A DNA stretch of 64,000 nt, from IMG/VR virus record IMGVR_UViG_3300049215_000771, positions 310,001 to 374,000 of that record; one strand, 5' to 3'. Numbering within the stretch: the first letter of the stretch is position 1; the number at the start of each line of letters is the position of its first letter. The notes under the pieces were generated by a model. It worked only from the letters and a program-made list of their open reading frames with translations, was not told where the DNA came from and did not search any database. The position numbers and the translations under genes are program-made. Of this stretch, positions 16,379 to 56,999 are shown one piece after another.

Positions 16379-16705
16379 ATGAGCCGTTACGACGAATGGG
16401 GCAGCACGGCCCGCAAACAGTACGACGACGATGAAGAAAACCAGGACATCATGGATGTCGATGACGAAGACATCGACGAAGATGACCTGGACGACGAAGA
16501 CGATCTCGACGATGACGACGATCTCGACGATGACGACTTCGACGACGATGACGACGAAGATTGGGACGACGATGACGACGACCTCGACGATGACGACTTC
16601 GACGACGATGACGATGACGAAGACGACTTCGACGATGACGATGACGACGATGACTTCGACGACGATGATGACGATGAGGATTTCGACGACGAGGACGAGG
16701 ACTAA
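16379..16705 (+). CDS. Extremely acidic poly-Asp protein
   Basis: AAGGAG RBS; C-terminal ~90 aa almost all D/E with periodic L/F/W. Confidence 0.7.
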   Translation: MSRYDEWGSTARKQYDDDEENQDIMDVDDEDIDEDDLDDEDDLDDDDDLDDDDFDDDDDEDWDDDDDDLDDDDFDDDDDDEDDFDDDDDDDDFDDDDDDEDFDDEDED

Positions 16706-28842: not shown

Positions 28843-30279
28843 ATGAACGCAAATTCCAAATTCCTGAACGAAGCTAGAGAGTTGGAAGGTCGTTGGGGCA
28901 AGACTGGCCTCTTGGAAGGCATTGAAGATCGCTACATCCGATCCGCCACCGCCGTTCTGCTTGAAAACCAGCGCCTCATGAACGAAGTTTCGACCGACAC
29001 TGGCGACATCGCTCAGTTCAAGCGTATCAGCATCCCGTTGGTACGTCGTATTTACCCGCAGCTAATTGCTAACAAGATTGTATCTGTTCAGCCATTGCTC
29101 GGCCCAACAGGTTTGGTGTACTACCTGCGCTTCCGGTACTCGTCCAACAAGGGCGCTACTCGTGGAGCGGACAACAACGGCGGCTTCCCGGCTGACGATG
29201 TGAACACCCTCATGCAGTTGGCTGATGGTACTGCCAACTTGGACATTTTCTACACGCACCAGTTCGTGCAGAACGAGTCCACCAGCACCGACAACGGTGG
29301 CAACGTCACTTCGGCGTACAGCCCGTTGGAACACACCCCGATCCTGGCCGGCACCATCACGGGCACGATCTATGACGGCTCCCTCGCAGTGCAGACCTTC
29401 GTGGTTTCCTCGACCGGAACCTTCACCTTCTCCAACATCGGTAGCCCAGCTACCTACGTCACCGCTGGTTCTTTGAACCTGACGACTGGCGAGTTGGTGT
29501 TGACTTGGAACTCGGCCCCAGGCCCGAACCACGCTGTACTTTCCTACGAGTACAACATGGAATGTCAACAAGATTTGCCGGAAATCAACTTGGTCATTGA
29601 GTCGGAAGAAATTGCCGCCAAGACCCGCAAGTTGAAGGCTGTATGGTCCTACGAAGCGCAGCAGGACTTGCGCTCGCAGCACAACCTCGACGCCGAGGCT
29701 GAGTTGACGGCTGTATTGGCCCAGGAAATCAACCTCGAAATCGACCGTGAAGTGTTGACGGACCTCCGTAACAACAGCGGTACGGTAGCGGCATGGGATT
29801 TCAACACGGCATTGGGCGAAACCATCAAGGAGAAGTATGAGTCGCTGTATGTGAAGGTTGTTGAAATCAGCAACGTCATCCACAGGAAGACTCTTCGTGG
29901 TGGTGCAAACTGGATGGTAACTTCCCCTGAAGTTGCTTCCATCTTCGAGACGGCAACCGCTGGTTTCGCACCGGCTCCATCTGAGACGTTCACTTCGTCG
30001 CTGGGTATCCAGTACGTCGGAACCGTCAACAACAGGTGGCGGTTGTACAAAGACCCGTTGTTCCCATCGAACCAGATTCTCATGGGGTACAAGGGTGATT
30101 CTTACATGGATTCGGGTTACTTCTATTGCCCCTACGTCCCGCTCACGCAGACGCCTGTGGTTTTGGACCCTGAGTCCTTCTGTCCGAGGAAGGGTATCCT
30201 TACACGTTACGGGAAGAAACTGTTGCGTGAAGGGGCCAAGTTCTACGCCAGGATGTCCATCGCCAACTTCGTCATCTAA
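28843..30279 (+). CDS. gp23: Major capsid protein (T4 gp23-like)
   Basis: LLENQ, IPLVRR, VQPLLGPTGLVYYLR, RKLKAVWS.E..QDL, LDAEAEL, YCPYVPL, GILTRYG. Confidence 0.97.
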   Translation: MNANSKFLNEARELEGRWGKTGLLEGIEDRYIRSATAVLLENQRLMNEVSTDTGDIAQFKRISIPLVRRIYPQLIANKIVSVQPLLGPTGLVYYLRFRYSSNKGATRGADNNGGFPADDVNTLMQLADGTANLDIFYTHQFVQNESTSTDNGGNVTSAYSPLEHTPILAGTITGTIYDGSLAVQTFVVSSTGTFTFSNIGSPATYVTAGSLNLTTGELVLTWNSAPGPNHAVLSYEYNMECQQDLPEINLVIESEEIAAKTRKLKAVWSYEAQQDLRSQHNLDAEAELTAVLAQEINLEIDREVLTDLRNNSGTVAAWDFNTALGETIKEKYESLYVKVVEISNVIHRKTLRGGANWMVTSPEVASIFETATAGFAPAPSETFTSSLGIQYVGTVNNRWRLYKDPLFPSNQILMGYKGDSYMDSGYFYCPYVPLTQTPVVLDPESFCPRKGILTRYGKKLLREGAKFYARMSIANFVI

Positions 30280-30307
30280 ACATGACAAGTTGATGGCAGC
30301 TTGAAAC
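30249..30307 (+). repeat. Direct repeat copy 1 (last codons of MCP + 3' UTR)
   Basis: caggatgtccatcgccaacttcgtcatctaaacatgacaagttgatggcagcttgaaac. Confidence 0.95.
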
Positions 30308-30345
30308 AAAGCCCTGGAGATTTTTCTCCAGGGCTTTTTCTTTTC
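30308..30345 (+). terminator. Terminator after MCP
   Basis: aaagccctggaga-tttt-tctccagggcttt + T tract. Confidence 0.85.
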
Positions 30346-30433
30346 CTTCTCCTGCATCAACCTGCGTCCGCTCCCTGGACCGGAAAACCTCTCGAAAGCC
30401 TGGAAATACGATGCGGGAAAGTTCCAAGAGTGG

Positions 30434-31237
30434 TTAAAAGACCTCATCTAACGTAGAATACCAGATTTTTTCATCAACCTCACAGATTGGATTCTGATGC
30501 AGATAATCTGGATACTTGGCGCATGGGGGCAAATCTCTGCTGCGAGCGAAAGCAAAATCGGTAATGCAGCCGGTCCTCAAGTAAAGACTCACTGCGAAAA
30601 TGTCCTGAGAATCAAATCTACAACTACTTGTAGAATGATGTTTGGATTTGGTGTGGATTAGTCGGGCGTATTTGGTGTTTGTTCCCCATAATGACTTGAT
30701 CTCGACTTTCTTTTTTGTGTCATTTTTGGATACAGCGAAATCGAAATTGTAGTATCTTCCAATGTGTTTTGCACAATCTCCTGGCATCTTTTTAACCTTG
30801 AAATTGTTACAACGACAATACCGAACAAATTCGTGTTCGACAAGGCCGCTCAAAAAGGAACCGCTTGTTCCATAACGATCTATTTCCAGCAAATCGCCAA
30901 CCTGGAGATGAGTGAGAGCCTGCGACAAATCATCTTTCTTGTTACTGCCTACATATATTTCTCCTTCCGCTAGATTGTTGGAGACAGCAATTATTCGCCC
31001 TTTTGCCAATTCCTTCCACTGCATTGTTTCAACAAAATTGCTACGAACAAATTTGCCGGTCTGTCCTGGAACCAACAATTCGTCATCTGTAGCATCTAAA
31101 ACAAACGAAGCTGTCCATTGCGTTCCATTCTTGCGAAGCGTCTTATCAATTCGCAAGATCGGAATGTAAGCAGGAAGTAGTACAGATTTCAAAGAATCTT
31201 GCGTCAGTCCCTTGTATTTTGCTTGTAACAGACCCAT
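30434..31237 (-). CDS. Putative PD-(D/E)XK restriction-like endonuclease (AT-rich cargo)
   Basis: VEHEF...NFDF...VEIKS catalytic-like pattern; ORF from ATG 31237 lies wholly between the repeats. Confidence 0.55.
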   Translation of the reverse strand: MGLLQAKYKGLTQDSLKSVLLPAYIPILRIDKTLRKNGTQWTASFVLDATDDELLVPGQTGKFVRSNFVETMQWKELAKGRIIAVSNNLAEGEIYVGSNKKDDLSQALTHLQVGDLLEIDRYGTSGSFLSGLVEHEFVRYCRCNNFKVKKMPGDCAKHIGRYYNFDFAVSKNDTKKKVEIKSLWGTNTKYARLIHTKSKHHSTSSCRFDSQDIFAVSLYLRTGCITDFAFARSRDLPPCAKYPDYLHQNPICEVDEKIWYSTLDEVF

Positions 31238-31260
31238 GCTTAATGATATGTCAATAAGCA

Positions 31261-31320
31261 CAGGATGTCCATCGCCAACTTCGTCATCTAAAACATGACA
31301 AGTTGATGGCAGCTTGAAAC
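31261..31320 (+). repeat. Direct repeat copy 2
   Basis: Identical to 30249-30307 except one extra A. Confidence 0.95.
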
Positions 31321-31323
31321 GAC

Positions 31324-31358
31324 AAAGGCCAGGCATTTCTGCCTGGCCTTTTTCTTTT
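31324..31358 (+). terminator. Terminator after repeat copy 2
   Basis: aaaggccaggca-tttc-tgcctggccttt + T tract. Confidence 0.8.
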
Positions 31359-31381
31359 GTGTCAAGTGCATACAATTCGAT

Positions 31382-32044
31382 ATGACTACATCACTACAAA
31401 TCTGTGGCTCTTGCAACGAGGCCAAACCACCAGAAGAATTCTACCCACCTACTTCCCATGAAAAACGCTGTCGCTCTTGCGCCAAATTAGAACAACACGC
31501 CAGGGTGAAAGCGGCCCACGCAGCAGGAATGACTCGCCGCCAGTGGGTCAGAAATGTTTCTGCCGAGGCTCGGAGCGAGGCTCTAGCCTTCTGGCGATCT
31601 ACACTCCTTCAAATTCAAACAAACACTCCGAAGGAGCAACCAAAAAAGAAAGCGCCCAAAGCTACATTCGATCATCTTGCTCTGCAAACCAGAGAACACA
31701 GCCGGTCGATGAAGAAAAAGATCAAGGAAGAACGGGCGAAACTGAACAACAAGCAAATAGACATCAAGGAAGGATTCATCTACGCAATCGTCAACCCGAA
31801 CATGAGTGAAGTTAGCCTGGGCATGACGCTTTCCTATGAAGATAGACTGAAAACCTATCAGCGCTACGATCCACACAAACGATTCTCTGTGGCGTATGCA
31901 AGGTTTGTCAAAAACAGGAGCAAGGCCGAGGCCAGGCTACATGCCGCCTTCAAAAAAGCCAGACTCTACGATGACGCAGAATGGTTCGCCATCACTGTAG
32001 AAGAAGCCATCAAAGTGATGGATGAAATAGCTGAAACAAGTTGA
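31382..32044 (+). CDS. GIY-YIG/T5orf172-like putative homing endonuclease with N-terminal Zn finger
   Basis: CGSC...CRSC; GFIYAI...SLGMT...RL...AEARLH...EWF. Confidence 0.75.
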   Translation: MTTSLQICGSCNEAKPPEEFYPPTSHEKRCRSCAKLEQHARVKAAHAAGMTRRQWVRNVSAEARSEALAFWRSTLLQIQTNTPKEQPKKKAPKATFDHLALQTREHSRSMKKKIKEERAKLNNKQIDIKEGFIYAIVNPNMSEVSLGMTLSYEDRLKTYQRYDPHKRFSVAYARFVKNRSKAEARLHAAFKKARLYDDAEWFAITVEEAIKVMDEIAETS

Positions 32045-32736: not shown

Positions 32737-33066
32737 TTAGCTCACTTGCCGTCCCAGGTCATGAGGAGCGATGCTGGTCTTCGACCCGTTCGGCAACCTT
32801 ACCAACACCTTTCCATCCCTTTCTTCCAAGACCTGAACCAAGATGGTATGCGTTGGATGCCACGCCTCGCCTTGTTGTTCGTAGTGGGCAATACGCTGCT
32901 TGTCAGCCAAGATTTCTTTCTTGGTCTTGTTCGCTTCCCGCTTTGTGCAGCAGAAGATAACATCGAGCAAACGTGGTTTTTCACCTTGTAAATACTCTTC
33001 CGGTAAATCCCAAACCATTACGTCGAAACCTGCCGGTTGATGGATTCTCACTTGAAGGTCGATCAT
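32737..33066 (-). CDS. Hypothetical protein
   Basis: ATGA coupling with the upstream gene. Confidence 0.55.
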   Translation of the reverse strand: MIDLQVRIHQPAGFDVMVWDLPEEYLQGEKPRLLDVIFCCTKREANKTKKEILADKQRIAHYEQQGEAWHPTHTILVQVLEERDGKVLVRLPNGSKTSIAPHDLGRQVS

Positions 33067-33566
33067 TTGCCATATCCCTTGACGTAATCCTTCGGCTCGA
33101 CCCAATTGATGTCGCCAAACCCACCGATGTACTGGATTTGTGCGGCCTCCATCCTGTAGAAGTTGAAGTCCTCAAAGTCGATGTATTGTTCGGTGTTCGG
33201 ATTGGCCTTCAGATAAATGTCCCGCAGCTTCTTGCGGTCCTTGGCGTCCGTCACCTTCGCCAATTTGCCGGCAAACGTGATCCTGGCGCTGTTCGATACA
33301 TCTTCCTTGTCGATCTTCATCACCATCAGGCTGCATTTTGGATTCTTCTTGAGATTCTTGGTGTGCTGGGCCATGTCGCTGATGAACAAGAACGGCACCC
33401 CTTTGTCATCCAGAGCATAAACAACCAAGGTGCCAAATGGCGTACCTTTGAAGTCAGATGACAAAGTTGCGACTTTCTCGTTCTTCACCAGGTTGTACAT
33501 GGCGTCGTATTCCTTCTCGTCTGAGTGTGCAACGCACAAAGCAGTCAATAACATGAGTTGAAGCAT
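33063..33566 (-). CDS. Pyridoxamine 5'-phosphate oxidase-like FMN/heme-binding split barrel (HugZ/CREG-like), putative signal peptide
   Basis: ATLS...PFGTLV, ISDMAQHTKNL..NPKCSL, DFNFYR...IGGFG. Confidence 0.82.
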   Translation of the reverse strand: MLQLMLLTALCVAHSDEKEYDAMYNLVKNEKVATLSSDFKGTPFGTLVVYALDDKGVPFLFISDMAQHTKNLKKNPKCSLMVMKIDKEDVSNSARITFAGKLAKVTDAKDRKKLRDIYLKANPNTEQYIDFEDFNFYRMEAAQIQYIGGFGDINWVEPKDYVKGYGK

Positions 33567-33567
33567 T

Positions 33568-34098
33568 TTATTTCTTCTTTCTCCTGCGGCCTGGCGGCAA
33601 AAATGTTGTTTCGGACAAGTAGCGATCTTCCTCGATACAAGGGTCGCAAACGAACTTGTCCGTGCCGCTCCAATGACCTTCGCCCGCAGGTATTTCGTAC
33701 TTGCATAATATGCAGTACGTTGGGTCATGATGTGGAAAAATAACATGAAAGGGATGATGGATCAAGGCGAAAATATCGGGAACTGAGAAGTTGGAAGCCT
33801 GTGTTCGATCCGCCTCCACCCTGACGTGTAGGTTCTTGTCCCTGTCCGTCCACCAGGCCACGCCCAGCCTTGATGTTTGTCCCGTGGCGTAGCCGCCGTC
33901 CGCCTTGTCGGGAGCGCCGCCGTTCCATTGCAGCACGCCTTCTGGTTTCTGCCATATGGGTTCCAGCGTGTAGTTGTCCGGCATCTTGACCTTCCTTGAC
34001 CTCACTTGTTGTTGTACACCCTCAAGAAGTTCTTTGATGGCCAATCGAACCTTCTGAAGTGTGGGATTCGTGAGAACGAGCCAGTGCATGTTGCCCAT
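33568..34098 (-). CDS. Hypothetical protein with C-terminal CxxC...CxxC
   Basis: CILC...CDPC. Confidence 0.55.
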   Translation of the reverse strand: MGNMHWLVLTNPTLQKVRLAIKELLEGVQQQVRSRKVKMPDNYTLEPIWQKPEGVLQWNGGAPDKADGGYATGQTSRLGVAWWTDRDKNLHVRVEADRTQASNFSVPDIFALIHHPFHVIFPHHDPTYCILCKYEIPAGEGHWSGTDKFVCDPCIEEDRYLSETTFLPPGRRRKKK

Positions 34099-34226: not shown

Positions 34227-34844
34227 ATGGACGCAAAATGGTTGGAAATCCAGGCTGTGGACCTGGCGACGGTGAAGGAAAAATTCAAATGGCGGAAAGG
34301 TTGGTGGTGGTGCCTGTGGCACGACGCCGACAAGATCGAACAGGAGTATCGACAATTCCTGTATCTGATCGCAACAAACCCTGGGGAAATGGTGGTCCCC
34401 TGGACGCAAGACATGGACGACTTCTGGCACGAACACATCCTCGACACATCTAAGTATCAAGCAGACTGCAACACAATTCACGGCTCCTTCATTCATCACA
34501 ATCCGCACGTCCCGAAGGGGTCGGAAACGCACGACAAGGCATTCACCAAGACCAAAACTCTCTACAAAAACGCCTTCAAGGACAAAGCCGAGAAGAAACG
34601 TGACACCGGCAGCGCAGGCTGCGGTGGAGCGGGCTGTACGACCTTCATGCCCATCGTGTTCTGTGCAACCCACACTAGCTGTAGCTCTCACGGACATGAC
34701 GGCGGGCACCACGGAGGCGATACGGGTCATAGCTGCGGTCACGGAGGCGATGCGGGTCATGGCTGTGGTCACGGGTGCGGTGGCCACGGATGCGGTGGAG
34801 GAGGTTGTGGTGGAGGCGGCTGCGGGGGTGGATGTAGCAGCTAA
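34227..34844 (+). CDS. DUF1399-like glycine-rich-domain protein with His/Cys/Gly tail
   Basis: EYRQFL, VP...DDFWHEHIL, FIHHNP; HGGD.GH.CG repeats; GAGG RBS. Confidence 0.78.
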   Translation: MDAKWLEIQAVDLATVKEKFKWRKGWWWCLWHDADKIEQEYRQFLYLIATNPGEMVVPWTQDMDDFWHEHILDTSKYQADCNTIHGSFIHHNPHVPKGSETHDKAFTKTKTLYKNAFKDKAEKKRDTGSAGCGGAGCTTFMPIVFCATHTSCSSHGHDGGHHGGDTGHSCGHGGDAGHGCGHGCGGHGCGGGGCGGGGCGGGCSS

Positions 34845-34904
34845 GTAGGAATTTCATTACCCTCCTTACTCTGTTAGGTGACATCCCAACAAGTAAGGAG
34901 GGTA

Positions 34905-35423
34905 ATGAAATTCGATCTGTACAAGAAAAAGTACCGCTGGAAGTTCTCAGCGGACTTCCCTGGGGCAACTCTGGCCGAGCAATTCGTCAAAATCGACGAG
35001 CGCCCGACCCTTCACATCGTTGAAAAAGAAAACAGCGACGGCAGTTTCCGCATTGAGAAACAGTCCTGGGCACCACTCGTCACGACGTTCTACGATCCAG
35101 GCACAACTGGACCCCAGGAACTCAAATGCGATTTGACGGGGCTATACACACTTCTGGCCGGGTTCTACGACTTCGGCGCATGTCTTTTCAAAACGGACGA
35201 CCCTTCCGAAAAGCTGGAAGAAATCAAAGACAGGCTCGGAACTGGTAAAATCACCATGTACGACGGCGAGACGCCCATTGAAATTTGGGAACTCCGTGGC
35301 TTGTGGCCGCACTCCGTCAACTTCGGCGATTTGTGCTATTCCAGCAGCGACGAGACGGAAATCGAGATTACCTGGCGATTCAAGGAGTGCAGCTACCACA
35401 ATCTGCTAACCCCAGCTAAATAG
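34905..35423 (+). CDS. Tail tube protein paralog (T4 gp19-like)
   Basis: KKYRW, RP, W.PL..TFYD, E.WELRGLWP.SVNFGDLCYSS. Confidence 0.75.
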   Translation: MKFDLYKKKYRWKFSADFPGATLAEQFVKIDERPTLHIVEKENSDGSFRIEKQSWAPLVTTFYDPGTTGPQELKCDLTGLYTLLAGFYDFGACLFKTDDPSEKLEEIKDRLGTGKITMYDGETPIEIWELRGLWPHSVNFGDLCYSSSDETEIEITWRFKECSYHNLLTPAK

Positions 35424-56195: not shown

Positions 56196-56999
56196 ATGAG
56201 CAGAATTAGACCAGCTTTCAAGTGTCATGGTGGGAAATACTACCTGTCCGAGTGGATTATCTCACATTTCCCTGAGAACTACAAAGACTACACCTACATC
56301 GAGCCTTACTGCGGTGGGGCCAATATCCTCATCAACAAGGAAAAATCGCCCCTTGAGGCCATTTCCGACACCGATCTCACTGTCATTCAAATCTTTCGGG
56401 CTTTGCGAGACGAGCCGAAGGAATTTGCACGCCGTTTGAACCTGATGAAATACTGTCAGGAAACCTTCGACCGGGCGGTAAAACGTCAAAATGGACCGTT
56501 TGACGATTATCTCGATCAAGCGATCAACGAATATGTCTTGCGGCGCATGTCCCGTGGTGGCTTGCGAAAGGCTTTTGCCTGGAGCAACCGGCTACGAGGA
56601 GGGCAGCCCGGAGATGTAAATGCGTGGAAAACGGCTTTGGCCCAGCTTCCGATCCTGGCCGAGCGTATGAAGGAAGTTTACATTTTCAACAAGCCTGCAC
56701 TGGAGGTTATCAAAACCTTCAACACGAAAAACGTGCTGGTCTATGCTGATCCACCGTACCTACATGACACCCGGCACAGCAAGAATGTTTACGCCAACGA
56801 GATGACCATCGACGATCATATCGAACTGTCCAGGGTTCTCAACACCTTCGCCGGGAAAGTTGTTCTCAGCGGCTACCCATCTCCGTTGTACACCAGGCTT
56901 TATCAGAACTGGAATTGCGAGAAGAAGAAGGTCGCCAACCACTCGTCTCAAGCCAGGGCGAAGGAAGTCAAGACTGAGATGATCTGGAAGAACTTCTGA
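56196..56999 (+). CDS. dam: D12-class N6-adenine DNA methyltransferase (Dam-like)
   Basis: GGK..L, YIEPYCGG, SD, YADPPY, SGY. Confidence 0.92.
   Translation: MSRIRPAFKCHGGKYYLSEWIISHFPENYKDYTYIEPYCGGANILINKEKSPLEAISDTDLTVIQIFRALRDEPKEFARRLNLMKYCQETFDRAVKRQNGPFDDYLDQAINEYVLRRMSRGGLRKAFAWSNRLRGGQPGDVNAWKTALAQLPILAERMKEVYIFNKPALEVIKTFNTKNVLVYADPPYLHDTRHSKNVYANEMTIDDHIELSRVLNTFAGKVVLSGYPSPLYTRLYQNWNCEKKKVANHSSQARAKEVKTEMIWKNF

What the first reader, a model, noticed from the sequence alone, without database searches (positions are those of the whole stretch)
30249..31358. Nuclease cassette bracketed by a duplicated 3' end of the major capsid gene
Seen: a 59/60-bp direct repeat (last ~9 MCP codons, stop and ~28 nt of UTR) at 30249 and 31261, each copy followed by a different terminator. 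Between them lies a visibly AT-richer, inverted ORF with a PD-(D/E)XK-like core and no integrase. A GIY-YIG-type gene follows. Inference: an att-like or homing-type insertion at the MCP end that forms a recombination-excisable moron. If the cargo is a restriction enzyme, the Dam-like methylase at 56196 could protect phage DNA while host or rival DNA is cut.
Basis: partly seen in the sequence, partly recalled or inferred. Interest (0 to 1): 0.7.

Follow-up and report, generated by a model that had tools for sequence, protein, structure and literature searches.

The report
Orphan restriction enzyme behind capsid gene
A 533-kb phage from moss carries, just after its major capsid gene, a restriction-enzyme gene without its protective methylase, flanked by a duplicated capsid-gene end; the phage genome lacks most palindromic cutting sites, which may be why it tolerates the enzyme.

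Summary
A 59/60-nt direct repeat (30249-30307 and 31261-31320) is the identical core of a ~110-nt duplicated module: capsid-gene 3' end, UTR, terminator and promoter remnant. It appears in two independent assemblies at twice the flanking depth.

The AT-rich minus-strand ORF (30434-31261) has no Pfam, PHROG or PDB sequence hit. It belongs to a family of ~290-aa proteins. In 64 of 66 bacterial loci that family sits convergent to a ~700-790-aa N6-adenine methylase, once with a controller protein. The model (pLDDT 90.7) has a PD-(D/E)XK C-domain and a predicted symmetric dimer.

The phage copy is an orphan. No cognate methylase and no integrase or resolvase were detected in the 533-kb genome. No empty site or excision joint was found.

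The Dam-like methylase also occurs in a relative that lacks the enzyme, so a dedicated pairing is unsupported.

Unexpectedly, 46 of 64 palindromic hexamers and CGCG are absent from the genome, including the cargo. A related phage carries the same fast-evolving orphan at another locus.

Best reading: a scar of unequal recombination between related phages, with a methylase-free restriction enzyme tolerated because its site is absent. The second part is inferred.

The parts
28843..30279 (+). Major capsid protein gene (T4 gp23 type), 478 aa
   Evidence: Pfam PF07068 Gp23 6.6e-86; PHROG 138 major head protein. 80 relatives share 84-96% aa identity. Transcript contigs appear in moss metatranscriptomes.
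30249..30307 (+). Repeat copy 1 (59 nt): 1 nt + last 9 MCP codons + TAA + 28-nt UTR containing a small hairpin
30308..30349 (+). Terminator 1: 13-bp hairpin (30308-30337) plus T-run. Read on the minus strand it could also end the nuclease transcript.
   Evidence: -31.1 kcal/mol, z -5.1; minus strand -24 kcal/mol, z -5.0
30249..30362 (+). Full duplicated module, copy 1 (MCP end, UTR, terminator, degenerate promoter remnant TGCAT-CAA)
   Evidence: BLAST 87% over ~100 nt; 73% to 30357; alignment A3
30363..31260 (.). Foreign, AT-richer segment (~0.9 kb) carrying only the nuclease gene. The left limit is approximate.
   Evidence: The 953 nt between the repeat copies (30308-31260) have GC 42.5%, the lowest 0.04% of genome windows. 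REase GC3 is 0.41 against 0.70 for the MCP. That 953-nt stretch contains none of the 46 purged palindromes (shuffles expect 9.9; P about 0.0005).
30434..31261 (-). Orphan type II restriction-endonuclease homolog. The GTG at 31261 gives 275 aa and matches the bacterial N-termini. The ATG at 31237 gives 267 aa and matches the related phage copy. Domains: N-terminal beta-barrel (about residues 20-130) and C-terminal PD-(D/E)XK (131-275).
   Evidence: 564 homologs; alignments A1 and A2; methylase neighbour in 64 of 66 bacterial loci; C-R-M operon at P0002; model pLDDT 90.7; fold matches; predicted dimer
31243..31271 (-). Promoter-like site for the nuclease gene: -35 TGGACA inside repeat copy 2, 17 nt, -10 TATCAT, then 5 nt to the ATG at 31237. 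Consensus match only.
   Evidence: 10 of 12 matches; the number of such sites in the region is not above chance. The same -10-to-ATG spacing occurs at the T5orf172 gene.
31261..31320 (+). Repeat copy 2 (60 nt), a non-coding remnant of the MCP 3' end plus UTR. Its first base completes the GTG codon of the nuclease ORF on the other strand.
31324..31363 (+). Terminator 2: 12-bp hairpin (31324-31351) plus T-run. An allelic variant of terminator 1.
31382..32044 (+). T5orf172/MUG113 (GIY-YIG superfamily) protein, 220 aa, with an N-terminal CxxC...CxxC region. Preceded by CATACAAT plus 5 nt, as in relative L010. Single copy in the genome.
   Evidence: Pfam PF10544 3.4e-11 and PF13455 7.6e-11; PADLOC PDC-S57 1.8e-12
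56196..56999 (+). D12-class (Dam family) N6-adenine DNA methylase, the only DNA methylase detected in the genome. Context, not part of the cassette.
   Evidence: Orthologs in G001 (56% identity) and LR756511.1 (55%).

Best explanation
The window is part of a 533-kb T4-like huge phage from moss metagenomes.

The module and the slot. In this phage clade the capsid gene ends in a conserved module: last codons, short UTR, strong terminator, then a -10-like box a few bases before the next ATG. Behind that module lies a slot whose genes differ from phage to phage.

How the duplication arose (inferred). Two allelic copies of the module stand in tandem here, with one foreign gene between them. I read this as the scar of an unequal, partly illegitimate recombination between two co-infecting relatives that carried different cargo behind the module. 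One brought the nuclease gene with terminator 1. The other brought terminator 2 with the T5orf172 gene. The event cut the nuclease gene exactly at its start codon. No recombinase is involved. The 59-nt identity could in principle allow loss by homologous recombination.

What the cargo is. It is an intact, fast-evolving orphan of a family of dimeric PD-(D/E)XK type II restriction endonucleases. In bacteria this family always travels with a large N6-adenine methylase, and sometimes with a controller protein.

Why the phage tolerates it (inferred). The phage has no such methylase. I propose that its own DNA lacks the enzyme's palindromic target: 46 of 64 palindromic hexamers and CGCG are absent from the genome. 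The enzyme could then cut host or rival-phage DNA only.

Shown versus inferred. Shown: the repeat, the fold, the family context, the orphan status and the palindrome purge. Inferred: the recombination history, enzymatic activity, site absence as the protection, and the offensive role.
For: Repeat and allelic terminators.

Reality of the structure: two assemblies, a strain variant, and twofold depth at the shared 32-mer.

Conserved module and variable slot:
- All 80 relatives have MCP, UTR and terminator.
- None has the nuclease or T5orf172.
- None of 72 tested relatives duplicates its MCP end.
- 88 ORF families occur among 173 downstream ORFs.
- The sequence after terminator 2 (CATACAATTCGATATG) matches L010 (CATACAATTCCATATG).

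No recombinase: PF00589 and PF00239 are absent from the genome.

Restriction-enzyme family:
- 64 of 66 bacterial loci have a convergent N6_Mtase.
- The nearest homolog sits in an HTH controller + R + M operon.
- PD-(D/E)XK fold: Z 12.3 to I-Ssp6803I, 10.5 to Hjc, 5.5-7.6 to NhoI, PvuII, DpnI, HhaI and MspI.
- Catalytic E142, D174, E187 and K189 lie in invariant columns.
- Symmetric dimer: ipSAE 0.76 against 0.00 for the best control, contact agreement at least 81%, partner pLDDT at least 85. The pass mark was reached by 20 of 30 true homodimers and 1 of 23 monomers.

Orphan status: no PF02384, PF01555, PF00145 or PF05869 hit, and no tblastn hit for the partner methylase.

Palindrome purge:
- 46 of 64 hexamers and CGCG have zero copies, while 592 kb of bacterial control DNA lacks none.
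- The cargo has 0 against 9.9 expected. Bacterial homolog genes average 9.1 per kb.

Second orphan: relative G001 (MCP 83% identical) has the homolog 70 kb from its MCP, without the methylase. It shares derived changes with the window copy (R15K, L32Y, loss of E176), and both sit on long branches.

Precedent: PacI is a solitary enzyme in a genome without its sites (PMC3488263).
Against: - The recognition site is unknown, so its absence from the phage genome is not shown.
- No transcript contig covers the nuclease gene in four RNA runs in which MCP reaches depth 10-33. Contig-level data are insensitive.
- The phage copy has lost 23 of 108 positions that are at least 90% conserved in bacterial members. 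Several of these lie in the predicted dimer interface, so it may be weakened or inactive.
- The sister grouping of the two phage copies involves two long branches and may be artefactual.
- The first 59 nt are identical while the next ~50 nt are only about 70% alike. That needs an extra assumption: either gene conversion, or donors identical in that stretch.
- No donor genome with MCP-terminator 1-nuclease and no cargo-free relative was found.
- The promoter assignment is a consensus match only.
Confidence: 0.5

Rival explanations
1. Homing-type element. The nuclease homolog, or the adjacent T5orf172 GIY-YIG-type protein, acts as a free-standing homing endonuclease. It cuts the capsid-gene end of relatives that lack it. 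Repair from the donor genome copies the cassette in, and an imperfect repair leaves the duplicated module.
For: - The best structural match of the catalytic domain is the PD-(D/E)XK homing endonuclease I-Ssp6803I (Z 12.3).
- The cassette is intergenic, beside an essential conserved gene, and absent from all 80 relatives.
- In G001 the homolog sits at a different locus beside an HNH gene and an intein-bearing RNR, which suggests mobility within the clade.
- T5orf172 matches a PHROG annotated as homing endonuclease, weakly (5.8e-4).
Against: - The family is a restriction-enzyme family by context in 64 of 66 bacterial loci, once with a controller protein.
- No pair of close relatives differing only by the cassette was found.
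- The G001 copy has no flanking repeat.
- The two phage copies are only about 47-50% identical, which does not fit recent homing.
- Homing by double homologous repair does not normally duplicate the target.
Confidence: 0.2
2. Silent passenger. The nuclease gene is an inactive or decaying remnant of a captured R-M system, kept only because it is harmless. The duplication is a neutral recombination scar.
For: - The end branch is about four times the family median (1.73 vs 0.41).
- 23 of 108 highly conserved positions are changed, including E176.
- Its native upstream region is lost at the junction.
- No transcript contig was seen.
Against: - The ORF is full length with all four catalytic residues and 85 of 108 conserved positions.
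- The model is confident and a dimer is predicted.
- The gene has been purged of all 46 taboo palindromes, which implies long residence without decay.
- A second clade member keeps an intact copy with shared derived changes.
Confidence: 0.15
3. One reading: an att-like, recombinase-mediated insertion at the MCP 3' end that forms an excisable moron, with the Dam-like methylase at 56196 protecting phage DNA from the enzyme.
For: - 59/60-nt direct repeats that restore the target gene's 3' end resemble attL/attR of elements that integrate into gene ends.
- The cargo has foreign composition and a terminator of its own.
- A D12 methylase exists in the genome.
Against: - No tyrosine or serine recombinase was detected in 533 kb.
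- Homology continues beyond the 59 nt as diverged allelic terminators.
- Cargo depth (41) equals right-flank depth (41.3), and no joint was seen.
- No empty site was found.
- The Dam-like gene has an ortholog in LR756511.1, where tblastn finds no REase homolog. It belongs to a different family from the cognate gamma-class partner.
Confidence: 0.08
4. Assembly artefact: the repeat results from mis-joining of strain variants.
For: Assembly graphs break at the repeat. Strain variation exists in the MCP gene.
Against: - Identical structure in two independent assemblies from different samples.
- A unitig spans the whole cargo into both copies. The two copies are distinguished by the 1-nt indel, and depth at the shared 32-mer is twofold.
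Confidence: 0.01

Closest known systems
PacI of Pseudomonas alcaligenes (a solitary type II restriction endonuclease in a genome without its sites)
   Same: A restriction enzyme kept without any cognate methylase. Self-protection is explained by the absence of recognition sites in the carrier's genome (as cited in PMC3488263).
   Different: PacI is an HNH-type (beta-beta-alpha-metal) enzyme of a bacterium with an 8-bp site; this rests on my own knowledge. Here the carrier is a huge phage, the fold is PD-(D/E)XK, the site is unknown, and the genome lacks not one site but 46 palindromic hexamers.
Orthodox type IIP R-M systems with controller protein (C-R-M operons)
   Same: Family membership by sequence (47-54% identity). 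PD-(D/E)XK core, predicted symmetric homodimer, and bacterial members flanked by an N6-adenine methylase and, at P0002, an HTH controller.
   Different: The phage copy has neither methylase nor controller, lies on a branch four times longer, and has changed 23 of 108 conserved positions.
Free-standing homing endonuclease genes of T4-like phages (seg/mob genes) and I-Ssp6803I
   Same: A nuclease gene inserted between conserved genes, with patchy distribution among relatives and a neighbouring GIY-YIG-superfamily gene. The catalytic domain's best structural match is I-Ssp6803I.
   Different: The sequence family is R-M linked. No target site or biased inheritance is shown. The target-end duplication is not a feature of homing.
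Phage morons (lambdoid/HK97 type)
   Same: An extra gene of deviant composition between genes of the structural module, with its own terminator and a possible promoter.
   Different: It lies in a virulent-type T4-like huge phage. It is flanked by a duplicated module. The cargo is a nuclease rather than a lysogenic-conversion gene.
Virus-encoded R-M systems (chloroviruses, P1) and T4 EndoII/EndoIV host-DNA degradation
   Same: A virus-encoded nuclease proposed to attack non-self DNA while the viral genome is spared (my own knowledge of these systems).
   Different: Those viruses protect themselves by methylation or hypermodified bases. Here protection would come from the absence of sites.

Membership tests
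Type II restriction endonuclease (PD-(D/E)XK, orthodox homodimer) | PD-(D/E)XK fold with acidic/lysine catalytic motif | tested here: met
   Model pLDDT 90.7. Residues 131-275 match I-Ssp6803I (Z 12.3), Hjc (10.5), and NhoI, PvuII, DpnI, HhaI and MspI (5.5-7.6). E142, D174, E187 and K189 lie in invariant columns. Prediction, not structure.
Type II restriction endonuclease (PD-(D/E)XK, orthodox homodimer) | Gene linked to a cognate DNA methyltransferase | tested here: not met
   The family meets this: 64 of 66 bacterial loci, plus C-R-M at P0002. This gene does not: no PF02384, PF01555, PF00145 or PF05869 hit and no tblastn hit in 533 kb. It is therefore an orphan member.
Type II restriction endonuclease (PD-(D/E)XK, orthodox homodimer) | Symmetric homodimer | tested here: met
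   ipSAE 0.76 against a best control of 0.00; contact agreement at least 81%; partner pLDDT at least 85. The mark was reached by 20 of 30 true homodimers and 1 of 23 monomers. Prediction only.
Type II restriction endonuclease (PD-(D/E)XK, orthodox homodimer) | Sequence-specific cleavage blocked by cognate methylation | not testable with these tools
   Needs the enzyme assay. The recognition site of the whole family is unknown, and every source that gives a name calls the proteins hypothetical.
Integrase-mediated integrative element (att sites) | Element- or genome-encoded tyrosine or serine recombinase | tested here: not met
   PF00589 and PF00239 are absent from the whole genome. Controls hit in 14 and 12 of 14 genomes.
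Integrative element (att sites) | Identical direct repeats at both ends that restore the target gene's 3' end | tested here: met
   59/60 nt. However, homology continues as diverged alleles.
Integrative element (att sites) | Empty site in relatives, or an excised junction or circle | tested here: inconclusive
   No joint was seen, and cargo depth equals flank depth. No empty site was found in metagenome, viral or exact-protein look-ups. Only contigs, not raw reads, were available.
Free-standing homing endonuclease gene | Nuclease of a fold used by homing endonucleases, located between genes | tested here: met
   PD-(D/E)XK fold as in I-Ssp6803I; intergenic position.
Free-standing homing endonuclease gene | Presence/absence polymorphism at the same locus among close relatives, with a cleavage site in the empty allele | tested here: inconclusive
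   The gene is absent from 80 relatives, but their downstream regions differ altogether. No near-isogenic empty allele was found. Cleavage is not testable.
Moron | Extra gene of deviant composition with its own terminator and promoter, between genes that are neighbours in relatives | tested here: inconclusive
   Composition: met. Terminator hairpin: met. Promoter: a consensus match only. Neighbours are not constant in relatives.
Solitary restriction enzyme protected by a site-free genome (PacI-like situation) | No recognition site of the enzyme in the carrier genome | not testable with these tools
   The site is unknown. The data are consistent: 46 of 64 palindromic hexamers and CGCG have zero copies in G000, and 30 of these are also absent from G001, which carries the other orphan.
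GIY-YIG superfamily, T5orf172 (the neighbouring gene) | T5orf172/MUG113 domain above the Pfam cut-off | tested here: met
   PF10544 44 bits (cut-off 20); PF13455 42.9 bits (cut-off 22.3).

The most novel reading that the evidence does not exclude
Huge T4-like phages of this clade have removed nearly every palindromic hexamer from half-megabase genomes. This serves to escape host restriction. It also lets them carry 'naked' type II restriction enzymes, stripped of methylase and controller, as offensive weapons against host chromosomes or co-infecting phages. These enzyme genes move between loci of clade members through conserved terminator-promoter modules.
Probability: 0.3. Interest if true: 0.8.

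Novelty: new variant of a known kind. Interest (0 to 1): 0.62.

Why it matters
- If the orphan enzyme is active, this would be a virus that uses a restriction enzyme without any methylase because its own genome is free of the site. That inverts the usual roles in the phage-host restriction conflict.
- It gives a testable reason why the largest phages, which offer the largest targets, purge palindromes so thoroughly.
- The complete loss of 46 of 64 palindromic hexamers from 533 kb is far beyond the usual site avoidance described for phages (PMC6286503, listed). I did not find it described for huge phages in the literature I could search.
- The enzyme family itself (more than 500 members, always next to a large N6-adenine methylase) is unannotated. 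It could yield a new specificity.
- The duplicated module shows how cargo is shuffled behind an essential gene without any recombinase.

Tried and rejected
Searches that gave nothing for the cargo protein:
- Pfam, PHROG, NCBIfam, PADLOC, and PDB by sequence, both single sequence and profile. There were no hits or only noise.
- The protein atlas returned only unnamed clusters.

Searches for other copies, an empty site or a donor:
- tblastn against 50,697 GenBank phage records: no homolog.
- Two exact patterns (the UTR and the MCP end) in metagenome contigs: none.
- The same patterns in viral contigs: only L007's contig.
- Exact-protein look-ups of the nuclease, T5orf172, MCP and orf150: only the same arrangement came back.

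Reads:
- Only Logan contigs are held for these runs. No joints appeared, so rare excision cannot be judged.

Other checks:
- Rfam: only sub-threshold hits on the terminator hairpins.
- The G001 nuclease gene has no flanking repeat like the one here.
- No relative duplicates its own MCP end. My first probe spanned the 1-nt indel and missed even the window's second copy, so I repeated it with a 31-nt probe.
- Remnant of the partner methylase downstream of the nuclease gene: no tblastn signal in the genome.

Ideas rejected:
- The long ORF starts at 31375 (TTG) and 31336 (ATG, used by gene callers for a 300-aa product). They run through the MCP-derived repeat and the terminator hairpin, and they extend beyond every homolog's N-terminus.
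- The Dam-like methylase as a dedicated partner.
Full report
**1. The observation**

30249-30280 is identical to 31261-31292, and 30278-30307 is identical to 31291-31320. Together that is 59 against 60 nt, with one extra A just after the TAA stop. Both exact words occur only at these two places in the whole 532,729-bp genome.

Copy 1 holds one base plus the last nine codons and stop of a gene at 28843-30279, followed by 28 nt of UTR. That gene is a T4 gp23-type major capsid protein (Pfam Gp23, 6.6e-86; PHROG 138).

Each copy is followed by a different perfect hairpin and T-run:
- 30308-30337: 13 bp, -31.1 kcal/mol, z -5.1.
- 31324-31351: 12 bp, -31.1 kcal/mol, z -4.8.

BLAST joins 30249-30344 to 31261-31358 at 87% with gaps. 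Weaker similarity runs to about 30362/31375. The two hairpins differ at several stem positions, and most of those differences keep pairing. So a module of about 110 nt is duplicated. Its first 59 nt are identical and the rest are about 70% alike.

**2. Not an artefact**

The window lies in a 532,729-bp IMG/VR virus record. The same sequence is in a 673-kb scaffold. The whole structure is also present in an independent 3,965-nt contig from another sample, which carries an in-frame 57-nt difference in the capsid gene and is therefore another strain.

In the Logan unitigs of two DNA runs:
- the 32-mer shared by both copies has depth 78-80;
- the left flank has depth 33.5, the cargo 41, and the right flank 41.3;
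- one unitig runs from copy 1 through the cargo into copy 2.

That is two copies per genome, with no visible cargo-free subpopulation. No joint was reported. Only contigs are held for these runs, so rare excision cannot be judged.

**3. The cargo**

The 953 nt between the copies have 42.5% GC against a genome mean of 52.8% (sd 3.4). Only 0.04% of genome windows are this low.

*The ORF and its start.* The single ORF runs on the minus strand from 31261 to 30434.
- A GTG at 31261 aligns with Met1 of bacterial homologs. Its first base belongs to the repeat.
- An ATG at 31237 lies two residues from the start of the copy in a related phage.
- The longer ORFs chosen by gene callers (300 or 313 aa) run through the MCP-derived repeat and the terminator hairpin. 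I reject them.

*Family and context.* The protein has no hit in Pfam, PHROG, NCBIfam, PADLOC or PDB sequences. It has 564 homologs of about 290 aa at 45-54% identity, all unnamed.
- In 64 of 66 bacterial genome loci, from many phyla, the gene is convergent with a ~700-790-aa N6-adenine methylase and often overlaps it. The two exceptions are truncated fragments.
- At the nearest homolog an HTH controller gene abuts the start of the nuclease gene, with a convergent methylase downstream. That is a textbook C-R-M type II system.

*Structure.* The AlphaFold model is confident (pLDDT 90.7, pTM 0.85).
- Residues 131-275 form a PD-(D/E)XK domain. Matches: Z 12.3 to the homing endonuclease I-Ssp6803I, 10.5 to archaeal Hjc, and 5.5-7.6 to NhoI, PvuII, DpnI, HhaI and MspI.
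- Residues 20-130 form a beta-barrel.
- E142, D174, E187 and K189 lie in invariant columns.
- A symmetric homodimer is predicted: ipSAE 0.76 against a best control of 0.00, contact agreement at least 81%, partner pLDDT at least 85. The pass mark was reached by 20 of 30 true homodimers and 1 of 23 monomers.

The cargo is therefore a member of an unannotated family of orthodox type II restriction endonucleases. Its activity has not been tested.

**4. An orphan**

The phage genome has no hit to N6_Mtase, N6_N4_Mtase, C5 DNA_methylase or the Dam family PF05869, and no tblastn hit to the partner methylase.

That gene has orthologs in G001 (56% identity) and LR756511.1 (55%). tblastn finds no homolog of the nuclease in LR756511.1 or in any of 50,697 GenBank phage records. 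So the Dam-like methylase occurs in this clade with and without the nuclease. It is not a dedicated partner, although incidental protection cannot be excluded.

**5. The unexpected context: a genome almost free of palindromes**

I was looking for avoided sites that might reveal the enzyme's target. What I found:
- 46 of the 64 palindromic hexamers have zero copies in 533 kb, where 92-179 of each are expected.
- CGCG has zero copies, where about 2,576 are expected.
- Several degenerate or asymmetric sites are also absent, for example GGTCTC and CYCGRG-type words.
- As a control, 592 kb of bacterial loci lack none.

Relatives share the trait with their own variations.
- The closest relative, L007, has none of the 46 in 11.4 kb.
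- G001 (210 kb, MCP 83% identical) lacks 31 hexamers and all CCGG. Thirty of those 31 are also absent here.
- A 50-kb sample of LR756511.1 lacks 26 hexamers and all CCGG.

The cargo follows the rule despite its foreign composition. It has 0 of the 46 against 9.9 expected (P about 0.0005), while bacterial homolog genes carry 9.1 per kb on average, with a minimum of 2.3. The gene has therefore lived in palindrome-purging genomes for a long time. Alternatively, it came from one; many relatives have 35-45% GC.

A solitary restriction enzyme tolerated because its site is absent from the carrier genome has a precedent in PacI (PMC3488263). I found no description of such an extreme purge in huge phages in the literature available to me. 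General site avoidance is well known (PMC6286503).

**6. A second orphan in the clade**

G001 carries a homolog (P0062) about 70 kb from its MCP gene. It lies between an intein-bearing ribonucleotide reductase and an HNH gene, without the methylase and without flanking repeats.
- In a maximum-likelihood tree the two phage copies are sisters (95/83). Both end branches are about four times the family median, so long-branch attraction is possible.
- Independent of the tree, they share departures from positions that are at least 90% conserved in bacterial members: R15K, L32Y and loss of E176.
- They keep 85 and 91 of 108 such positions. Bacterial members keep 103-108.

This fits a single capture followed by fast evolution once the methylase was lost. 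It also leaves room for decay.

**7. How the duplication arose**

No tyrosine or serine recombinase was detected anywhere in the genome. That argues against an integrase-type att insertion.

All 80 relatives end the capsid gene with the same kind of module: UTR, then a lineage-specific terminator hairpin, and in the close subclade a -10-like box 3-6 nt before the next ATG. The sequence after terminator 2 here (CATACAATTCGATATG) matches L010 (CATACAATTCCATATG).

What follows the module differs widely:
- 88 ORF families occur among 173 ORFs in 51 loci.
- None of the relatives has the nuclease or T5orf172.
- None of 72 tested relatives duplicates its MCP end.

I therefore read the structure as two alleles of the conserved module brought into tandem by an unequal recombination between two related phages with different cargo. 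One junction was homologous. The other was illegitimate and lies exactly at the nuclease start codon (31260/31261). This is inference. It requires either later gene conversion or donors that were identical over the first 59 nt, and no donor was found.

Loss of the cassette by recombination between the 59-nt copies is mechanistically possible but was not observed.

**8. Expression**

MCP transcript contigs (depth 10-33) are present in four metatranscriptome runs from moss, two of which may be the same data set. The phage is therefore active there. No contig covers the nuclease or T5orf172, but this is weak negative evidence.

A promoter-like site places a -35 (TGGACA) inside repeat copy 2 and a -10 (TATCAT) 5 nt before the ATG at 31237. 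The T5orf172 gene has the same spacing (TACAAT, 5 nt, ATG). TAYAAT-N3-6-ATG opens 10 long ORFs in the genome, against 0-3 in simulations. Leaderless-type starts thus seem to be used by this phage. For the nuclease gene itself this remains a consensus match only.

**9. Verdict**

- Right: a restriction-type PD-(D/E)XK nuclease cassette of foreign composition, in a variable slot, followed by a GIY-YIG-type gene, with no integrase.
- Not supported: the att-like origin, visible excision, and the Dam partnership.

Most likely this is an orphan type II restriction enzyme in a site-purged huge phage, sitting in a recombination scar. Whether it is an active weapon, a selfish homing-type gene or a silent passenger needs the enzyme assay and raw-read mapping described under next steps.

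Noticed in passing
Whole genome G000 (window = G000:310001-374000); also G001 (L167-L177), L178 and L007: Extreme purge of palindromes. 46 of 64 palindromic hexamers and CGCG have zero copies in 533 kb. Relatives lack overlapping but not identical sets: G001 and LR756511.1 lack all CCGG instead of CGCG. 592 kb of bacterial control DNA lacks none.
   Followed up: partly
L158:5971-6840 (G001, about 90.6-91.4 kb): A second orphan copy of the same restriction-enzyme family in a related huge phage. It lies between a ribonucleotide reductase that contains an intein-like insert and an HNH endonuclease gene. It has no methylase and no flanking repeat.
   Followed up: partly
window 29495-29551: An independent contig from another sample (L089) lacks 57 nt, in frame, within the capsid gene and has two further mismatches. 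This is a strain variant in a variable part of the MCP. Logan contigs of run X3 also break there.
   Followed up: partly
window 31370-31384 and the relatives' loci listed: After the MCP terminator, many relatives have a -10-like hexamer (TATAAT or TACAAT) only 3-6 nt before the ATG of the next, otherwise unrelated, gene. This suggests leaderless transcripts. TAYAAT-N3-6-ATG opens 10 long ORFs in the genome against 0-3 in Markov simulations.
   Followed up: partly
G000:214700-225200 (outside the window): A cluster of at least a dozen copies of a 40-90-nt direct repeat (80-100% identity), spaced 0.3-5 kb apart. It looks like a repeated intergenic regulatory module.
   Followed up: no
G000:294565-299105, 270014-271282 and 273020-275616 (outside the window, upstream): Long internally repetitive stretches (tandem units at 66-86% identity over up to 4.3 kb), probably repeat-rich large proteins.
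   Followed up: no
window 34227-34913: An ORF of 205 aa (PF27765 UCP032817-like in the public gene calls) ends in a Gly/Cys/His-rich tail (GHGCGGHGCGGGGCGGGGCGGGC). It is followed at once by a 65-nt self-complementary (palindromic) stretch at 34849-34913 (89.6%).
   Followed up: no
window 33063-33746 (-): A CREG/PNPOx-like FMN-binding beta-barrel protein (PF13883, 2.6e-24) in the variable region. It is absent at this position in the closest relative L007. A homolog (51% identity) lies elsewhere in G001.
   Followed up: no
window 16458-16702: An adjacent tandem duplication of about 120 nt (79% identity), seen in the genome self-comparison.
   Followed up: no
window 29000-30151: MCP mRNA contigs at depth 10-33 in moss and plant metatranscriptomes, so this huge phage was actively infecting in the sampled moss.
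   Followed up: partly
G000 record versus the 673,178-bp scaffold: IMG/VR labels the 533-kb record 'provirus', cut from a 673-kb scaffold, yet no integrase or resolvase was detected in it. The nature of the extra ~140 kb (host flank, concatemer or more phage) was not examined.
   Followed up: no
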